A DNA stretch of 64,000 nt from Octopus bimaculoides (Eukaryota): the NCBI RefSeq assembly GCF_001194135.2, contig NC_068990.1, positions 37,177,916 through 37,241,915 of the forward strand, in the 5' to 3' direction. The first letter of the stretch is position 1. Each line of letters starts with the position of its first letter. The position numbers and the translations under genes were made by a program. The notes below the pieces were generated by a model, which did no database searches, was not told the origin of the DNA, and saw only the letters and a list, made by a program, of their open reading frames with translations. This document shows positions 42,156 through 64,000 of the stretch, piece after piece.

Positions 42156-42512
42156 AGTTGGCACAGCAAGACACACAGTAGGCATTCCATTCATTTCCCG
42201 GCTCAAAGAATATGAGGGAAATAAAATCGAATTCACAAAATTTTGTTATTCACTACGATTGTTTTGACCCATCATGTGCAGATGAGATGCTGTACAAAGA
42301 GTTGTGGTTCATCGTAGGGGCAGACATGTCTCATCAGATGACTTCTCAAAAGGTTTCTTGTTTCCTAATCTCCCTTTCACTTCTTTCGATTACAATACAG
42401 TGTGACAGTTCTAGTGTGCTATGCGTCTACACAGGTAGCTGAGCACTGTGAATAGGCTTTAAACGGCATACTACAAGATGTATACCTAAATATAATTTTT
42501 TTGCTTATATAT

Positions 42513-42882
42513 AGGTGCAGGGGTGGCTGTGTGGTAAGAATCTTGCTTCCCAACCACATGGTTCCGGGTTCAGTCCCACTGCACGGCACCTTGGGCAAGT
42601 GTTTTCTACCATAACCTCAGGCCCACCAAAGCCTTGTGAGTGGATTTGGTAGACAGAAACTGAAAGAATCCTGTATATGTATGTTTGTGTGTCTGTGGTT
42701 GTCCCCCTATCATTGCTTGACAACAGAAGTTGGTGTGTTTATGTCCCAATAACTTAACGGTTCAGCAAAGGTGACTGATAGAATAATTACTAGGTTTACA
42801 AAGAATAAGTCCTCGGGTCGATTTGTTTGAGTAAAGGCTGTGCCCCAGCATGGCCACGGTTAAGTGACTGAAACAAATAAAT
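42513..42882 (+). mobile_element. Family D tRNA-derived SINE, full length (candidate octopus OR-type CORE-SINE)
   Basis: A-box-like TGGCTGTGTGG, GGGTTCAGTCCC, CORE-like CACCTTGGGCAAGTG, 3' CCCCAGCATGGCCAC...TGACTGAAACAAATAAA. Equating it with OR1/OR2 is inference. Confidence 0.85.
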
Positions 42883-42922
<40 letters not shown>

Positions 42923-42925
<3 letters not shown>

Positions 42926-43196
42926 CAATGTTAATTCTCTAAATGAAGTATTAACAGTAACTGCACGATAAAGTGTAGTATATTGCCACTTAAGTGTGGC
43001 TGACCCCTAGGGGTGGATGTTACTGTTGCTTTTAGCTCCAGGAGGACATCTCCTTCAGCTGGCTTATCGACACACGACTGTGTCCTGTTTGCCAAGGGAG
43101 TTATCCCTCTCACCACGACCAGCAGCACGAACGTATCCGGATTTCAGGGTTATTTCCCTTCGTCGGCGTTCGACAGCTGATGACCTTGGTGAGAGA
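42923..43196 (+). mobile_element. Family E hairpin-rich dispersed element, copy 1 (terminal cassette in flip orientation)
   Basis: Four copies in the window; starts AAGCAATGTTAATTCTC right after (TA)n and ends TGGTGAGAGA before TAT/gap. Class unknown. Confidence 0.85.
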
Positions 43197-43316
43197 TATN
43201 NNNNNNNNNNNNNNNNNNNNNNNNNNNNNNNNNNNNNNNNNNNNNNNNNNNNCCTGGCAAAATCTTATATCTTCTTTTCCAGTGACATTCTTCACTGATA
43301 TTGAAAAGGTGAAAAC

Positions 43317-43589
43317 AAGCAATGTTAATTCTCTAAATGAAGTATTAACAGTAACTGCACGATAAAGTGTAGTATATTGCCACTTAAGTGTGGCTGACCC
43401 CTAGGGGTGGATGTTACTGTTGCTTTTAGCTCCAGGAGGACATCTCCTTCAGCTGGCTTATCGACACACGACTGTGTCCTGTTTGCCAAGGGAGTTATCC
43501 CTCTCACCACGACCAGCAGCACGAACGTATCCGGATTTCAGGGTTATTTCCCTTCGTCGGCGTTCGACAGCTGATGACCTTGGTGAGAG

Positions 43590-43590
<1 letters not shown>
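43317..43590 (+). mobile_element. Family E copy 2 (identical to copy 1 as read, offset 394 bp)
   Basis: Direct comparison; followed by (TA)n; upstream flank differs from copy 1. Confidence 0.85.
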
Positions 43591-43620
<30 letters not shown>

Positions 43621-43826
43621 TATCAGGTCATAGAATCATGAAGGTGCACATGCCATTGGATTTTGAATGTTTTAGAATGTTGTGATTCATGTATTCACAT
43701 GATGAAAACAGTTTTTACTAATGACATAATTAATTAATAAATTAATTATGTCACAATTAATTAATAAAAAAAATTCATTGGAAACAGCTGTAGTGGATTG
43801 ACAAATCATCCATGTTATTATATATA

Positions 43827-50907: not shown

Positions 50908-52844
50908 TAATTATATTTGTGTGTATACATATATAGAGAGAGAAACAGAGAGAAAGTAAGAGAGAGATAGAGAGATGCAGACTAACTATCAAACAGATAG
51001 ACAGATAGACAGATAGAAGATAGATAGATAGATCAGTAGATTGAGAAATAGATAGAAAGAGATATTTGAGCATTAAGCGCATAAGGCATTCGAGAGCAAG
51101 AAGATGAGTAAATAGAAAGACGGTGTGTTGTAAGGGAGAAGGTAGAAAAGGTAGGTGGTAGTGGCGGTGGCGTTGGCAGTGGCGGCGATAGTGACCGCAA
51201 TGGTAGAGGTGGTAGCGATGGTGGCGGCAGTGCTGGTGATGGCAACTGTGGTGGCAGTGGTGGAGGTGGTGGTATTAGTAGTAATAAGGAGAGGAGGATG
51301 AGTGGATGATGAAGAGGAGGCATGCTTAGAGAGAGTGGGTGGTGGAGAAAGAGGTAAAGGACGAAACAGATGGATGTAAAAAAAGAGAGAGAGAAAGAGT
51401 TAGGAGAGTACAGAGAGGGAGATTGTCAACGCCCCCTCCTCTTACACACTTCTTTCTCTTCTTCTCCCACTACATCTCTCTCTCTGTCTCATTCCCTTTC
51501 TATTTCACTCCCCACTTCCTCACTCTCACACTACATACTTATCTGTCTCTTTTTCTCTTTGACTCCCTCTGTCTCATTCTCTCTCACTCACATATATATA
51601 TATATATANNNNNNNNNNNNNNNNNNNNNNNNNNNNNNNNNNNNNNNNNNNNNNNNNNNNNNNNNNNNNNNNNNNNNNNNNNNNNNNNNNNNNNNNNNNN
51701 NNNNNNNNNNNNNNNNNNNNNNNNNNNNNNNNNNNNNNNNNNNNNNNNNNNNNNNNNNNNNNNNNNNNNNNNNNNNNNNNNNNNNNNNNNNNNNNNNNNN
51801 NNNNNNNNNNNNNNNNNNNNNNNNNNNNNNNNNNNNNNNNNNNNNNNNNNNNNNNNNNNNNNNNNNNNNNNNNNNNNNNNNNNNNNNNNNNNNNNNNNNN
51901 NNNNNNNNNNNNNNNNNNNNNNNNNNNNNNNNNNNNNNNNNNNNNNNNNNNNNNNNNNNNNNNNNNNNNNNNNNNNNNNNNNNNNNNNNNNNNNNNNNNN
52001 NNNNNNNNNNNNNNNNNNNNNNNNNNNNNNNNNNNNNNNNNNNNNNNNNNNNNNNNNNNNNNNNNNNNNNNNNNNNNNNNNNNNNNNNNNNNNNNNNNNN
52101 NNNNNNNNNNNNNNNNNNNNNNNNNNNNNNNNNNNNNNNNNNNNNNNNNNNNNNNNNNNNNNNNNNNNNNNNNNNNNNNNNNNNNNNNNNNNNNNNNNNN
52201 NNNNNNNNNNNNNNNNNNNNNNNNNNNNNNNNNNNNNNNNNNNNNNNNNNNNNNNNNNNNNNNNNNNNNNNNNNNNNNNNNNNNNNNNNNNNNNNNNNNN
52301 NNNNNNNNNNNNNNNNNNNNNNNNNNNNNNNNNNNNNNNNNNNNNNNNNNNNNNNNNNNNNNNNNNNNNNNNNNNNNNNNNNNNNNNNNNNNNNNNNNNN
52401 NNNNNNNNNNNNNNNNNNNNNNNNNNNNNNNNNNNNNNNNNNNNNNNNNNNNNNNNNNNNNNNNNNNNNNNNNNNNNNNNNNNNNNNNNNNNNNNNNNNN
52501 NNTACACATGTGTAGACAGAAATAAAGATAGAGAGAATGAGAGAGAGAGAATGAGAGAGAGGGAGGGAGATAGAAGGGGGGGGGCTTTAAAACACTCTCC
52601 CAGAAATAAGGGGAAGTGAGAATAAAAGGCATATAGGAAAAGATGAAGGTGAGTGGAAATAAGAGAAGAAGGCAAAAAAAGAAAAAGAAAAAAGGGAGAA
52701 CTGAATTTTAGGGAAAGGAAGAGGAGAAGATGAGCAAAAGGATGAGGAGTATCTGGGTGAAAGGAAGAGGATGAACTAACAGTAAGGGGTGGAGATCTCA
52801 AAAAAAAATAATTTAATAAATGTGTGATGGTGTTGATGGAGTTT

Positions 52845-53040: not shown

Positions 53041-53110
53041 TAGGAGTTGGTAGTGATGGTAGCAGCAGTGTGGTAATAGTGTGAAGGCAGTGAGGGGTGA
53101 TAACAGCAGT

Positions 53111-53218
53111 AGAGGTGGTAGTGGTAGTAGAGGTGGTAGTGGTGGTAGAGGTGGTAGTGGTGGTAGAGGTGGTAGTGGTGGTAGAGGTGGTAGTGGTGGT
53201 AGAGGTGGTAGTGGTGGT
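53111..53218 (+). repeat. 18-bp minisatellite AGAGGTGGTAGTGGTGGT x6
   Basis: Direct count; first unit has one substitution. Confidence 0.92.
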
Positions 53219-53684
53219 AATGATGATGATGAGAGAAATGATGGTGTTAATGGTGGTTGTGATTGTACTGGTGGTGGTGGTGGTGGTGGTGGTAGTTTTT
53301 TGTCATGGTCAAGGTAATAGTAGTGTGAATTAGTTCTTGTTGAAGTAATGGTAATGATAGTGAGTGTGGTGGTGGTGATGGTGGTGGTTGCATTGTTGAT
53401 TATTGTTGCGGTGGTAGTGATGGTGGTTATAATGGTGATCGAAGAGGATGGGAGGTAGTGGTAGGGATGGTTGTAGTTTTGGTGGTAGCATAGAGTGGTG
53501 ATCCTGTTTGCACTGGTAACAGTGGTAGTGATGCCAATTGTGGCCGTGGTGTCAATTGTGGTGTTGATGTTAGTTTTGGCGGTAGTAGTGGTGGTGATAC
53601 TAGCTGTAGTTGTGGTAATAGTGTGGGATGGTGAGGCCAGTTCTGACTGCAATGGCAGAGGTGGTGGTGGTGTTGTTATTGGTG

Positions 53685-58117: not shown

Positions 58118-58365
58118 CTCTCTTTTTACTCTTTTACTTGTTTCAGTCATTTGACTACGGCCATGCTGAAGCACCGCCTTTAGTTGAGCAAATCGACCCC
58201 AGGACTTTATTCTTTGGAAGCCTAGTACTTATTCTATTGGTCTCTTTTGCTGAACCGCTAAGTTACGGGGATGTAAACACACCAGCATCGGTTGTCAAGC
58301 GATGTTGGGGGGAACAAATACAGGCACACAAACACACACAGACACACATATATATATATATATAC

Positions 58366-58408
<43 letters not shown>

Positions 58409-59125
58409 NNNNNNNNNNNNNNNNNNNNNNNNNNNNNNNNNNNNNNNNNNNNNNNNNNNNNNNNNNNNNNNNNNNNNNNNNNNNNNNNNNNNNNNNNNNN
58501 NNNNNNNNNNNNNNNNNNNNNNNNNNNNNNNNNNNNNNNNNNNNNNNNNNNNNNNNNNNNNNNNNNNNNNNNNNNNNNNNNNNNNNNNNNNNNNNNNNNN
58601 NNNNNNNNNNNNNNNNNNNNNNNNNNNNNNNNNNNNNNNNNNNNNNNNNNNNNNNNNNNNNNNNNNNNNNNNNNNNNNNNNNNNNNNNNNNNNNNNNNNN
58701 NNNNNNNNNNNNNNNNNNNNNNNNNNNNNNNNNNNNNNNNNNNNNNNNNNNNNNNNNNNNNNNNNNNNNNNNNNNNNNNNNNNNNNNNNNNNNNNNNNNN
58801 NNNNNNNNNNNNNNNNNNNNNNNNNNNNNNNNNNNNNNNNNNNNNNNNNNNNNNNNNNNNNNNNNNNNNNNNNNNNNNNNNNNNNNNNNNNNNNNNNNNN
58901 NNNNNNNNNNNNNNNNNNNNNNNNNNNNNNNNNNNNNNNNATATATATATATATATATATACGATGAGCTTCTTTCAGTTTCTGTCTACCATATCCACTC
59001 ACAATGCTTTGGTCAGCCCGAGGCTATAGTAGAAGACACTTGCCCAAGGTGCCACGCAGTGGGGCTGAACCCAGAACCATGTGGTTGGTAAGCAAGCTAC
59101 TTACCACACAGCCACTCCTACGCCT
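58118..59125 (-). mobile_element. Family D SINE with internal microsatellite containing an assembly gap (58409-58940)
   Basis: Both halves are colinear with 42513-42882 in reverse complement. Confidence 0.88.
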
Positions 59126-59585
59126 CTATATATGTGTCTGGATAGAAAAAAAAAATGGGACGGTCATGGATGGACTACTTTTGATCATAATTCTGGTTAC
59201 TTGGGACTGACCTGAGATTAAACAATAACCTCTCAGTTTCCATTTCTTCCTTACACTCATTCTATCATATCACTCAATATTTACGTCACTCTACTCTCTT
59301 GTTCACACACACACACACACATACACAAAAACACATACACAGACATATAACAGATATTCAGATATGTTACTACATATACAAACGCAGATACAAAAGCACA
59401 CACGCACATGTTCTTATAAATACTCATACATACATAGGCACACATACACGGGCATATACATATTTTCCCAACCCCAAAAATGCTTACATTCTTACATACA
59501 CACATGCACACACACATATAAATACAGTTGCACATACACACCAATAAAAGCTCACAAGTAAAAGACAGTGGGGGGGGGGCTTTAT

Positions 59586-61613: not shown

Positions 61614-61844
61614 TGCAGTGAAATGGCAGAATCATTAGCATGCCGGGTGAAATACTTAGCAGCATTCCATCTGCCGTTACATTCCGATTTCAAATTCCGC
61701 TAGGGTCGACACTGCCTGTTAATCCTTTTGGGATTGATTAAACAAGTACCAGTTATGCACTGGGGTCGATGTAATCGACTTAATCCCTTCCCCTAAATTT
61801 AAGGCCTTGGGCTTCCAGTAGAAAGAACTATCATTATTATTATT
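61614..61844 (+). mobile_element. Family B SINE, full length with (TAT)n tail
   Basis: Colinear with 16385-16604. Confidence 0.85.
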
Positions 61845-61972
61845 ACCAACCACATGGTCCTGGGTTCAGTCCCACTGCATGGCACCTTGGGCAAGTGTCT
61901 TCTACTATAGCCTCGGGCCGACCAAAGCCTTGTGAGTGGATTTGGTAGACGGAAACTGAAAGAAGCCCGTCA
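61845..61972 (+). mobile_element. Family D SINE 5' half running into microsatellite and gap
   Basis: CCAACCACATGGTCCTGGGTTCAGTCCCACTG...GGAAACTGAAAGAAGCCCGTC. Confidence 0.88.
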
Positions 61973-61985
61973 TAGATATAGATAT

Positions 61986-62022
<37 letters not shown>

Positions 62023-62438
62023 NNNNNNNNNNNNNNNNNNNNNNNNNNNNNNNNNNNNNNNNNNNNNNNNNNNNNNNNNNNNNNNNNNNNNNNNNNNNNN
62101 NNNNNNNNNNNNNNNNNNNNNNNNNNNNNNNNNNNNNNNNNNNNNNNNNNNNNNNNNNNNNNNNNNNNNNNNNNNNNNNNNNNNNNNNNNNNNNNNNNNN
62201 NNNNNNNNNNNNNNNNNNNNNNNNNNNNNNNNNNNNNNNNNNNNNNNNNNNNNNNNNNNNNNNNNNNNNNNNNNNNNNNNNNNNNNNNNNNNNNNNNNNN
62301 NNNNNNNNNNNNNNNNNNNNNNNNNNNNNNNNNNNNNNNNNNNNNNNNNNNNNNNNNNNNNNNNNNNNNNNNNNNNNNNNNNNNNNNNNNNNNNNNNNNN
62401 NNNNNNNNNNNNNNNNNNNNNNNNNNNNNNNNNNNNAC

Positions 62439-62709
62439 AAGCAATATTAATTCTCTAAATGAAGTATTAACAGTAACTGCACGATAAAGTGTAGTATATT
62501 GCCACTTAAGTGTGGCTGACCCCTAGGGGTGGATGTTACTGTTGCTTTTAGCCCCAGGAGGACATCTCCTCCAGCTGGCTTATCGACACACGACTGTGTC
62601 CTGTTTGCCAAGGTTTTTCTCTCTCACCAAGGTCATCGGCTGTCGAACGCCGACGAAGGGAAATAACCCTGAAATCCGGATACGTTCGTGCTGCTGGCCG
62701 TGGTGAGAT
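62439..62709 (+). mobile_element. Family E copy 3, terminal 89-bp cassette inverted (flop)
   Basis: 62439-62613 is colinear with 42923-43097; 62621-62709 is the reverse complement of 43107-43195 (86/89). Confidence 0.88.
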
Positions 62710-63018
62710 TCTGAAGAAGAAAAACAAATAGCCAGCCGCACATGTGTGGTTACATATAAAGTCTCTCTCATCTAATCAAGCAGGTGTCAAATGATTATGC
62801 TTCTATGAAGATCTGATGAAGTCCTGTAATGCAGAAACAAGACAGCTAACAAGGATCAGTTTTGTTGAGTAACCTTTTGTAGAGCATATTATCAATCCAT
62901 ATGAGGCACATATAAATCACAAAAAATCTGTTAGAAAAGAAAGACTTTGTATGCTGCAGAAATACAAAGGTACATTATTTACATTTGACGGATATTTGTC
63001 CTCATCTTGTTTGTTGTT

Positions 63019-63064
63019 AACACAACGTTTCGGCTGATATATCCTCCAGCCTTCATCAGGTGTC
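63019..63064 (-). ncRNA. Minimal type I hammerhead ribozyme motif
   Basis: RNA: GACAC-CUGAUGA-A-GGCUG-GAGGAUAUAU-CAGCC-GAAA-CG-UU/GUGUU. Stem I GACAC:GUGUU, stem II GGCUG:CAGCC, loop-less palindromic stem III ACGU, cleavage triplet GUU. Confidence 0.8.
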
Positions 63065-63111
63065 TTGGAGAAATTTCGAACCTGGGTTCTCATTCCTAAG
63101 GTATTTTTCGA

Positions 63112-63153
<42 letters not shown>

Positions 63154-63168
63154 GCAGGTCACTGCCTA

Positions 63169-63222
63169 GAATCGAACTTGGAATCTTGGGGTTAGTAGCC
63201 CGCGCTCTTAACCACTACACCA
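63169..63222 (-). promoter_or_regulatory. Internal RNA polymerase III type-2 promoter (A box 63222-63212, B box 63177-63169)
   Basis: A box TGGTGTAGTGG and B box GTTCGATTC match the consensus with tRNA-like spacing. Confidence 0.75.
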
Positions 63223-63800
63223 TATGCCCATGGGCAAATGTAAATAATGTAAATAATTCATCATCTCTTAAATATAGAACTGGAACATAAAAGTAGTTAA
63301 CTAAAAGTACTGATATGATAGAAATATTTCCAAATGCCTCGAGGTTTCCTTGTATGTAGTGGACAGTTTTAGTTAGCTAAGGGGTCAGATGTAGCAGTGA
63401 TGGTTGGTGCTCTGAATATAGGAGTTAAACACTTCAGAGAGGTGTTGTATCAACTAGGAGGAAAGAAATTTGTCCTGCAAGTGACAGGCAAACTTTATAA
63501 CCCTCGAACACAAAGTGTGATACTGCAAAGAAGCAAAACCTGAACATTAAGTTCTTCGTTACCTTTTATCTATTTAAATACAGTGACATTTTTTTTTTTT
63601 TTTAATGAATTTCGAAATAAAGTAGCAACTTTCTCATTGTTAATCTAATATCTGGAACATATATTAACATGAAATTTTAATGGATGGGTTTCAGATCATC
63701 CTAAAGCAGGAGGTTTACATCACAGAAATGGCTGGTTTCAGATGGGTTACACAGAGGCACGTGGCACATATGTATGTATATATATATATATGTATATATA

Positions 63801-63847
<47 letters not shown>

Positions 63848-63850
<3 letters not shown>

Positions 63851-64000
63851 CAATGTTAATTCTCTAAATGAAGTATTAACAGTAACTGCACGATAAAGTG
63901 TAGTATATTGCCACTTAAGTGTGGCTGACCCCTAGGGGTGGATGTTACTGTTGCTTTTAGCCCCAGGAGGACATCTCCTCCAGCTGGCTTATCGACACAC
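63848..64000 (+). mobile_element. Family E copy 4 (truncated by window end)
   Basis: Starts AAGCAATGTTAATTCTC right after (TA)n; shares variants with copy 3. Confidence 0.88.

What the first reader, a model, noticed from the sequence alone, without database searches (positions are those of the whole stretch)
62621..62709. Flip/flop: the terminal 89-bp domain of family E occurs in both orientations
Seen: copies at 42923 and 43317 carry CTCTCACCA-CGACC...GACCT-TGGTGAGAG (43107-43195, 43501-43589). The copy at 62439 has the same first 175 bp in the same orientation, but this domain is reverse-complemented (86/89 identical). The inversion ends coincide with the domain's own 9-bp inverted repeats (CTCTCACCA/TGGTGAGAG), and only the short linker differs (GAGTTATCC versus TTTTTCT). 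The domain folds as an imperfect rod (further stems CAGCAGC/GCTGATG, CGAACG/CGTTCG, AGGG/CCCT). Established: imperfect terminal hairpins in two complementary orientations are the signature of rolling-hairpin replication (parvoviral flip/flop ends). Inference: either this element replicates through a hairpin-primed ssDNA step or has an invertible switch, or this is a one-off template-switch inversion. There is only one flop copy here.
Basis: partly seen in the sequence, partly recalled or inferred. Interest (0 to 1): 0.8.

Follow-up and report, generated by a model that had tools for sequence, protein, structure and literature searches.

The report
One inverted hairpin in an octopus repeat
One copy of a short, hairpin-rich repeat in an octopus genome carries its 89-base end module backwards; the sequence is as described, but the evidence points to a single local DNA rearrangement and not to a hairpin-replicating or switchable element.

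Summary
The 89-bp module at 62621-62709 is the reverse complement (86/89) of the module at 43107-43195 and 43501-43589. It sits behind the same 175-bp left arm (172/175) in the same orientation. The window is a gap-ridden, microsatellite-rich draft scaffold, most likely from Octopus bimaculoides. Family E is a young, non-coding, 273-bp interspersed repeat that sits next to (AT)n tracts.

I could recover only two more copies, both embedded in O. bimaculoides protein models. Both are flip and both carry the flip linker. The tally is 3-4 independent flips and 1 flop.

The junction inboard of the module is not conserved in the flop. The 9-nt linker is replaced by 7 unrelated bases. Together with the preceding G, those bases are the reverse complement of an 8-mer in the right flank, so the hairpin stem is extended. 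No Rep/HUH, recombinase or RT gene lies in the window, and the left end has no matching terminal hairpin.

Best reading (about 50%): a one-off inversion at a quasi-palindrome, by replication template switching or break repair. Rolling-hairpin replication and an invertible switch are not supported. No octopus DNA collection was available, so a genome-wide census and read support remain untested.

The parts
42923..43097 (+). Family E copy 1, left arm (175 bp)
   Evidence: 100% identical to 43317-43491. Preceded by the (AT)n that follows a tRNA-derived SINE at 42511-42906.
43098..43106 (+). Flip linker GAGTTATCC, copy 1
43107..43195 (+). 89-bp hairpin domain, flip orientation, copy 1; followed by ATAT and then a 53-N gap
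43317..43491 (+). Family E copy 2, left arm
   Evidence: the left flank is unique sequence
43492..43500 (+). Flip linker GAGTTATCC, copy 2
43501..43589 (+). 89-bp hairpin domain, flip orientation, copy 2; followed by (AT)n
   Evidence: rod-like fold, z=-4.3
62439..62613 (+). Family E copy 3, left arm (172/175 to copies 1 and 2); begins 2 bases after the 414-N gap
   Evidence: differences at positions 8, 115, 133
62614..62620 (+). Flop linker TTTTTCT, not homologous to the flip linker. With G62613 it reads GTTTTTCT, the reverse complement of 62718-62725.
62621..62709 (-). 89-bp hairpin domain in flop orientation (reverse complement of the flip domain, 86/89)
   Evidence: differences at flip positions 1, 12, 72
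62718..62725 (+). Flank 8-mer AGAAAAAC, complementary to the flop linker. It extends the hairpin to 62613-62725.
   Evidence: An 8-mer match of this kind occurs in 0.1% of 40-nt windows of this sequence.
63848..64000 (+). Family E copy 4, left arm positions 1-153, cut by the window end; domain orientation unknown. Preceded by (AT)n.
   Evidence: 152/153 identical to copy 3
22665..22759 (-). Old, diverged relative of the left arm (positions 60-176). Runs into the gap 22466-22660 right after a flip-like linker start. Preceded by (AT)n.
   Evidence: nhmmer E=1.7e-4

Best explanation
Family E is a young, non-coding, hairpin-rich short interspersed repeat of an octopus genome. It is SINE-like, and its class is not established. 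Its normal form is left arm, then a 9-nt linker, then an 89-bp quasi-palindromic rod in the flip orientation.

The copy at 62439-62709 suffered a single, locus-specific DNA rearrangement. The rod, perhaps with a few flank bases, was re-synthesised or re-joined in the opposite orientation. The 9-nt linker was lost and 7 new bases complementary to the right flank were gained.

The most likely route is template switching of a DNA polymerase at the quasi-palindrome. This is the Ripley-type inverted-repeat spacer inversion or stem extension, here with switch points lying outside the 9-bp arms. The alternative route is breakage at an extruded hairpin followed by end joining.

Shown: the inversion, the changed linker and the complementary 8-mer. 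Inferred: the mechanism, the direction of change (flip to flop) and that it happened after insertion.
For: - Flip is the common and older state. The window pair and two further copies embedded in O. bimaculoides proteins, P0001 and P0002, read through the junction in flip orientation with the same linker plus or minus 1 nt. An old diverged relative at 22665-22759 also starts a flip-like linker.
- P0002 carries the same two left-arm variants as the flop copy but is flip. Flop is therefore not a trait of that subfamily.
- The flop domain is no more diverged than its left arm (3/89 against 3/175). Both parts are therefore of similar age.
- The flop linker plus the preceding G is the exact reverse complement of AGAAAAAC, which begins 9 nt beyond the domain. 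This lengthens the hairpin. By chance this occurs in about 0.1% of 40-nt windows for the 8-mer and 1.3% for the 7-mer. New complementarity next to an existing stem is a described footprint of template-switch mutation (PMC8794818, PMC5453318).
- Spacer inversion between inverted-repeat arms of 9 bp or more by intermolecular switching is documented (PMC8604942).
- No solo domain occurs in the window.
Against: - Only about five copies could be examined. No octopus DNA collection was reachable.
- Documented spacer inversions are 2-8 nt. Here 71 nt lie between the arms.
- A clean arm-mediated inversion would leave the linker intact, so an asymmetric switch or a second event is required.
- The 9 nt between the domain and AGAAAAAC (62709-62717) are not explained by a single two-jump switch.
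- The 8-mer match was noticed post hoc in a purine-rich flank.
- The ancestral state of this locus is unknown, and the left flank lies in a gap.
Confidence: 0.5

Rival explanations
1. Inversion at the moment of insertion. E is a LINE-mobilised retroposon and the copy was made with one part inverted, by twin priming or by a template jump of the reverse transcriptase. For twin priming the domain must be the 5' end, so E would be read from the window's minus strand.
For: - The structure is an inverted terminal block plus a direct remainder, with a small loss (9 nt) and different bases at the junction. That is the layout of 5'-inverted retrocopies (PMC2912911, PMC12016303).
- The minus strand of E has no TTTT run, while the plus strand has one.
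- Octopus genomes carry many active LINEs and unclassified SINEs (PMC13282606).
Against: - The sense strand is not established.
- The old relative at 22665-22759 lacks the left about 55 nt. That is a 5' truncation only if the plus strand is the sense strand, which would put the domain at the 3' end, where twin priming does not invert.
- No A/B box, tRNA or other Pol III head was detected.
- Target-site duplications cannot be checked because the left flank is a gap.
- Seven filler bases that are complementary to the flank are not a usual twin-priming junction.
Confidence: 0.12
2. The 89-bp unit is itself a tiny foldback or MITE-like mobile unit with 9-bp terminal inverted repeats. It entered this locus independently, in the other orientation, next to a left arm that lacked it.
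For: - A 4-nt direct repeat TTCT flanks the flop domain (62617-62620 and 62709-62712).
- Taking the domain and one TTCT out in thought leaves GTTTTTCT-GAAGA-AGAAAAAC, a ready-made small hairpin.
- The unit has terminal inverted repeats.
Against: - In all five observations the domain is attached to the left arm, and no solo domain or solo left arm was seen.
- Two independent insertions within 2 nt of the same point behind the left arm would need extreme target specificity.
- The flip copies show no duplication around the domain.
- The domain and the arm are equally diverged.
Confidence: 0.08
3. Assembly artefact. The flop arrangement was created by chimeric reads or by gap closing in a short-read draft assembly and does not exist in the animal.
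For: - The scaffold has 17 N gaps in 64 kb.
- The flop contig starts 2 bases after a gap.
- The neighbouring flip pair is 100% identical across a gap, which hints at assembly redundancy.
- Hairpin-forming DNA is prone to fold-back chimeras in library preparation (general knowledge).
Against: - Two novel junctions (left arm to TTTTTCT to domain; domain to unique flank) agree with each other and lie inside one contig that continues into 1.1 kb of unique sequence.
- 9-bp repeats are far shorter than assembly k-mers.
- The flop domain has private substitutions.
Confidence: 0.1
4. Family-level flip/flop. The hairpin is turned over regularly, either by hairpin-primed (rolling-hairpin-like) copying of a single-stranded DNA intermediate or by a site-specific invertase acting on the 9-bp repeats.
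For: - An imperfect terminal rod with 9-bp inverted ends occurs in both orientations behind the same arm.
- The whole element is unusually structured on both strands (z=-4.7 and -5.0).
- E copies abut (AT)n far more often than chance: 4 of 6 visible ends, where (AT)n covers 5% of the sequence. The integration chemistry is therefore unknown.
Against: - The tally is 1 flop to 3-4 flips.
- The inboard junction is not conserved, which neither hairpin transfer nor an invertase predicts.
- The other end has no terminal hairpin.
- No Rep/HUH, helicase, recombinase or RT was found in any ORF of the window.
- No match was found in viral contig collections.
Confidence: 0.06

Closest known systems
Inverted-repeat spacer inversion and stem extension by replication template switching (Ripley model; short template-switch mutations: PMC5453318, PMC8794818, PMC8604942)
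   Same: - A segment bounded by short inverted repeats (9 bp) is replaced by its reverse complement.
- New bases next to the stem are complementary to sequence on the other side, which lengthens the hairpin.
- It is a single-locus event.
   Different: - The inverted segment is 71-89 nt, against 2-8 nt in the documented loop and spacer inversions.
- The switch points must lie outside the arms.
- 9 nt of the flank are not explained by one two-jump event.
- The ancestral allele is not available.
Twin-priming 5' inversions of LINE-mobilised retrocopies (Ostertag and Kazazian 2001, from general knowledge; PMC2912911)
   Same: A terminal block is inverted and the rest is direct, with a small loss at the internal junction. 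The host genome is rich in LINEs and SINEs.
   Different: It requires the domain to be the 5' end of the transcript, which is not shown and is weakly contradicted. Target-site duplications are not checkable. The filler is complementary to the flank.
Parvoviral flip/flop termini made by hairpin transfer in rolling-hairpin replication (general knowledge)
   Same: An imperfect palindrome at the end of a unit exists in two orientations that are reverse complements of each other.
   Different: - Only one end is a hairpin.
- The two forms are not present in comparable numbers.
- The sequence just inboard of the hairpin changes.
- There is no Rep/NS1 gene.
- The unit is a 273-bp chromosomal repeat, not a linear replicon.
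SINEs whose 3' end is a stem-loop followed by a short tandem repeat, recognised by a stringent partner LINE (the L2/CR1 type, e.g. the eel UnaSINE1/UnaL2 pair; general knowledge)
   Same: It is short, non-coding and dispersed. If the plus strand is the sense strand, the element ends in a hairpin followed by (AT)n.
   Different: No Pol III head was detected, no partner LINE is known, and no target duplications were seen. (AT)n occurs at both ends, which suggests a microsatellite target rather than a tail.

Membership tests
Rolling-hairpin (parvovirus-like) replicon | Palindromic hairpins at both termini of the unit | tested here: not met
   Only the right end is an 89-nt rod. The left terminus holds only small internal stems.
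Rolling-hairpin (parvovirus-like) replicon | Flip and flop present in comparable numbers | tested here: inconclusive
   1 flop against 3-4 flips, but only about five copies were reachable.
Rolling-hairpin (parvovirus-like) replicon | Sequence inboard of the hairpin identical in flip and flop | tested here: not met
   GAGTTATCC against TTTTTCT.
Rolling-hairpin (parvovirus-like) replicon | HUH/SF3 replication initiator gene in the element or nearby | tested here: not met
   The window has no ORF of normal composition longer than 118 aa. The 10 I picked among the longer ones give no Pfam hit above cut-off. There is no ORF next to the flop. Elsewhere in the genome is not testable.
Site-specific invertible DNA switch | Inverted repeats bounding the invertible segment | tested here: met
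   CTCTCACCA/TGGTGAGAG, 9 bp (8/9 in the flop).
Site-specific invertible DNA switch | Both orientations at one and the same locus | not testable with these tools
   This needs reads or other individuals. Here flip and flop are at different loci.
Site-specific invertible DNA switch | Recombinase gene in the neighbourhood and unchanged flanks | tested here: not met
   No recombinase-like ORF. The linker differs.
Template-switch inverted-repeat spacer inversion | Inverted-repeat arms of about 9 bp or more, with the spacer replaced by its exact reverse complement | tested here: met
   9-bp arms. The 71-nt spacer is 69/71 as reverse complement. Arm length criterion from PMC8604942.
Template-switch inverted-repeat spacer inversion | Sequence outside the arms unchanged, or changed only into the complement of nearby sequence | tested here: inconclusive
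   The linker is replaced, and its replacement is the complement of the flank 8-mer at 62718-62725. The 9 nt in between are unexplained.
Template-switch inverted-repeat spacer inversion | Ancestral (uninverted) state at the same locus | not testable with these tools
   No orthologous or allelic sequence is available.
Twin-primed retrocopy | The inverted block is the 5' part of the transcript | tested here: inconclusive
   The sense strand is unknown. The TTTT distribution favours the minus strand, and the truncated relative at 22665-22759 favours the plus strand.
Twin-primed retrocopy | Target-site duplication around the whole insertion | not testable with these tools
   The left flank lies in the gap 62023-62436.
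SINE | Internal Pol III promoter head (tRNA, 5S or 7SL-derived) | tested here: not met
   ARAGORN finds none and Rfam finds none, even at E up to 10. These tools also miss the obvious tRNA-like head of the neighbouring SINE, so the test is weak.
SINE | Short, non-coding, dispersed, with many near-identical copies | tested here: met
   273 bp, 4 copies at 98-100% identity in the window, plus 2 elsewhere in O. bimaculoides.
Canonical Helitron (non-autonomous) | 5' TC and 3' CTRR ends, insertion between A and T, and a hairpin 10-12 nt before the 3' end | tested here: not met
   On the minus strand a TC start after A is possible. However, the other end reads ...CATTGCTT followed by A or G, not CTRR followed by T.

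The most novel reading that the evidence does not exclude
Family E could be a mobile element whose terminal hairpin is turned over repeatedly. Flop copies would then be a regular minority across the octopus genome. That would point to a hairpin-primed, single-stranded DNA step in the life of a chromosomal animal repeat, or to recurrent, structure-driven inversion acting as a mutational hotspot in every copy.
Probability: 0.07. Interest if true: 0.75.

Novelty: new member of a known kind. Interest (0 to 1): 0.25.

Why it matters
If it is a one-off, this is a clean and unusually long (about 90 nt) natural example of hairpin inversion with stem extension inside a repeat. That is useful as a case for template-switch mutation models, but it is not a new kind of biology. 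It would matter more if a census showed recurrent flipping. That would reveal either a structure-driven mutational hotspot repeated across a repeat family, or an unrecognised DNA-hairpin step in the spread of an animal repeat. The family itself is worth a note for octopus repeat annotation, where most SINEs are still unclassified (PMC13282606). It is young and hairpin-rich, it is associated with (AT)n, and it has ready-made splice sites that have been exonised in a gene model.

Tried and rejected
- Rfam (gathering thresholds on the whole window, permissive on 42700-43800) and ARAGORN gave no hammerhead, tRNA, snRNA or other family. Only chance microsatellite matches to miRNA models appeared.
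- Collecting more copies by DNA failed.
  - The one metagenome scan with a 20-mer of the domain gave 5 chance hits with no further similarity.
  - Scans of prokaryotic genomes and viral contigs gave nothing.
- Collecting more copies through proteins gave little.
  - An ORF across the flip junction found P0001.
  - A flop-reading ORF found nothing. The word index also missed P0002 there, so that negative is weak.
  - The exhaustive representative search with the flop minus-strand ORF gave only P0003, a repetitive protein whose contig L006 has no DNA similarity to E. I treated it as a chance hit.
- Exact look-ups of P0001, P0002 and three E ORFs in the contig index were not on record.
- I rejected a tail-to-tail pair of E copies with a deletion, because nothing downstream of the flop domain matches the reverse complement of the linker or arm.
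- I rejected a segmental duplication of the SINE plus E. The upstream SINEs are 90.6% identical while the E arms are 98.3% identical.
- I rejected the idea that the right flank is the 3' end of a LINE, because 62700-63850 has no open frame.
- Canonical Helitron ends do not fit.
- A paper search for E sequence strings found nothing.

Full report
**What the window is.** The 64-kb window has 17 runs of N and 34.7% G+C, and it is crowded with (AT)n, (AC)n and (AG)n tracts. It has no Rfam family at gathering score and no tRNA gene. It has no ORF of normal composition longer than 118 aa, and the 10 I picked among the longer ones give no Pfam hit above cut-off. An ORF read across family E finds a single protein among 5.8 billion, an uncharacterised 54-aa protein of Octopus bimaculoides (P0001). 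A second search finds the N-terminus of an O. bimaculoides anion-exchanger model (P0002). The window also holds several copies of a tRNA-derived SINE with an internal microsatellite. I conclude that this is a draft short-read scaffold of an octopus, most likely O. bimaculoides.

**The observation.** It is correct.
- Copies at 42923-43195 and 43317-43589 are 273 bp long and 100% identical.
- The copy at 62439 shares the 175-bp left arm in the same orientation (172/175).
- Its 89-bp end (62621-62709) matches only as the reverse complement, 86/89.
- The domain is not similar to its own reverse complement (35/89; nhmmer E=3.9), so the orientation call is secure.
- The domain ends in 9-bp inverted repeats and folds as an imperfect rod (-19.2 kcal/mol as DNA, z=-4.3).
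- The linker is GAGTTATCC in the flips and TTTTTCT in the flop.
- A fourth copy (63848-64000) is cut by the window end at position 153.
- An old diverged relative of the arm lies at 22665-22759 on the minus strand and runs into a gap.

**What family E is.**
- It is short and non-coding, and both strands are strongly structured (z=-4.7 and -5.0).
- It has no terminal inverted repeats and no visible target duplication.
- Four of its six visible ends abut (AT)n, although such runs cover only 5.2% of the resolved sequence.
- I found no Pol III head. That test is weak, because the same tools also miss the obvious tRNA-like head of a neighbouring SINE.
- Canonical Helitron ends do not fit.
- I call it a SINE-like, unclassified interspersed repeat. 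Octopus genomes are reported to hold about 12% SINEs, mostly unclassified, and active microsatellite-associated Dong-R4 LINEs (PMC13282606).
- The sense strand is not settled. The minus strand lacks TTTT. Against that, the truncated relative looks 5'-truncated only if the plus strand is the sense strand.

**How many flips and flops.** No eukaryotic DNA collection was reachable. The metagenome scan gave only chance 20-mer hits. Scans of prokaryotic genomes and viral contigs gave nothing. Exact look-ups of E-derived proteins were not on record. Two further copies came from proteins.
- P0001 reads left arm, then the flip linker with one extra base, then the flip domain.
- P0002 residues 24-74 read left arm, then the same linker with a 1-nt indel, then the flip domain.
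- P0002 carries the same two left-arm variants (positions 115 and 133) as the flop copy and copy 4, yet it is flip.
- A flop-reading query found nothing. The exhaustive search gave only a chance hit.
- The tally is 3-4 independent flips and 1 flop. This sample is small and biased by ORF structure.

**The junctions.** A hairpin-transfer flip/flop or a site-specific inversion would leave the sequence just inboard of the hairpin unchanged. Here the conserved 9-nt linker is gone. The 7 bases in its place, together with the preceding G (GTTTTTCT, 62613-62620), are the exact reverse complement of AGAAAAAC at 62718-62725 in the right flank. The flop locus therefore folds into a longer hairpin than any flip copy. 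Such an 8-mer match occurs in about 0.1% of 40-nt windows of this sequence (1.3% for the 7-mer), but I noticed it post hoc. A 4-nt direct repeat TTCT also flanks the flop domain. The domain and the arm of the flop copy are equally close to the flip copies (3/89 and 3/175), so they appear to be of similar age.

**Explanation.** I favour a single, locus-specific rearrangement of one copy, at about 0.5. The rod was copied or rejoined in the opposite sense, with loss of the linker and gain of bases complementary to the flank.
- Template switching at inverted repeats is known to invert spacers when the arms reach about 9-10 bp (PMC8604942).
- It is also known to invert loops and extend stems (PMC8794818, PMC5453318).
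- The known cases are much shorter.
- One two-jump event does not account for the 9 nt between the domain and AGAAAAAC.
- Break repair at an extruded hairpin is an equally local alternative.

**Rivals.**
- An insertion-time inversion such as twin priming (0.12). This needs the domain at the 5' end, which is not shown.
- An independently mobile 89-bp foldback unit (0.08). The domain has never been seen without the arm.
- An assembly artefact (0.10). Two mutually consistent novel junctions inside one contig argue against it, but reads are needed.
- A true family-level flip/flop by hairpin-primed replication or an invertase (0.06). It is contradicted by the changed inboard junction, the single hairpin end, the 1:3-4 ratio and the absence of any replication or recombination gene here.

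**Comparison and verdict.** In mechanism the finding is closest to inverted-repeat spacer inversion and stem extension by template switching. It is not a member of the rolling-hairpin or invertible-switch systems on the features I could test. It is a real sequence feature and a new example of a known kind of mutation in a poorly described octopus repeat. Interest is modest (0.25). It would rise sharply only if a genome-wide census showed recurrent flops.

Noticed in passing
42923-43199 and 43317-43593: Two family E copies are 100% identical over 277 bp. They lie 394 bp apart across a 53-N gap but have different left flanks ((AT)n against unique sequence). This could be assembly redundancy, a very recent local duplication or gene conversion.
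   Followed up: partly
window 43429-43581 (E positions about 113-265); protein P0002 residues 24-74: The flip form of E carries a ready-made acceptor (TTGCTTTTAG|) and a donor at the domain end (CTTG|GTGAGAG). The O. bimaculoides anion-exchanger model A0A0L8G4E9 appears to have exonised exactly this stretch of another E copy, preceded by an exon from a tRNA-head SINE.
   Followed up: partly
42511-42906 (+), 38680-39084 (-), 58127-59132 (-, with gap), 61843-62022 (+, runs into gap): These are copies of a tRNA-derived SINE with clear A- and B-box-like motifs, an internal GT/AT microsatellite and an A-rich or AT-rich tail. Two E copies (42923 and 62439) lie directly downstream of such a SINE in the same orientation. 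The SINEs are only 90.6% identical while the E arms are 98.3% identical, so this is not a joint duplication.
   Followed up: partly
18024-18385 (+) and 30863-31228 (-): A second SINE family has a tRNA-like head (TGGCCCAGTGG ... GGTTTTGATTCCCAGACC). Its head translates to the same peptide as the first 22 residues of P0002. Neither ARAGORN nor Rfam reports it.
   Followed up: partly
22665-22790 (-): The old relative of the E left arm keeps the small hairpins in shortened form, for example GACA-TAG-TGTC in place of GACACA-CGAC-TGTGTC. It is also preceded by (AT)n. Its continuation, where a domain would lie, is lost in the gap 22466-22660.
   Followed up: partly
E ends at 42922/42923, 43195/43196, 43589/43590, 63847/63848: Four of six visible E ends abut (AT)n, although (AT)n runs make up 5.2% of the resolved sequence. 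The family either targets AT microsatellites or seeds them.
   Followed up: partly
62617-62620 and 62709-62712: A 4-nt direct repeat TTCT lies on both sides of the flop domain. It could be chance in a T/C-rich context, microhomology or a target duplication.
   Followed up: partly
43326-43334 with 43490-43498 (predicted pairing): In the plus-strand fold the flip linker region (GGGAGUUAU) pairs with UAAUUCUCU near the 5' end and closes the left arm into one domain. The flop linker cannot form this helix. This is a prediction only.
   Followed up: no
14273-14579, 21663-21810, 51189-51288, 53083-53300: There are long imperfect GGT/GTG-rich minisatellite arrays that read as low-complexity ORFs. They are not related to family E.
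   Followed up: no
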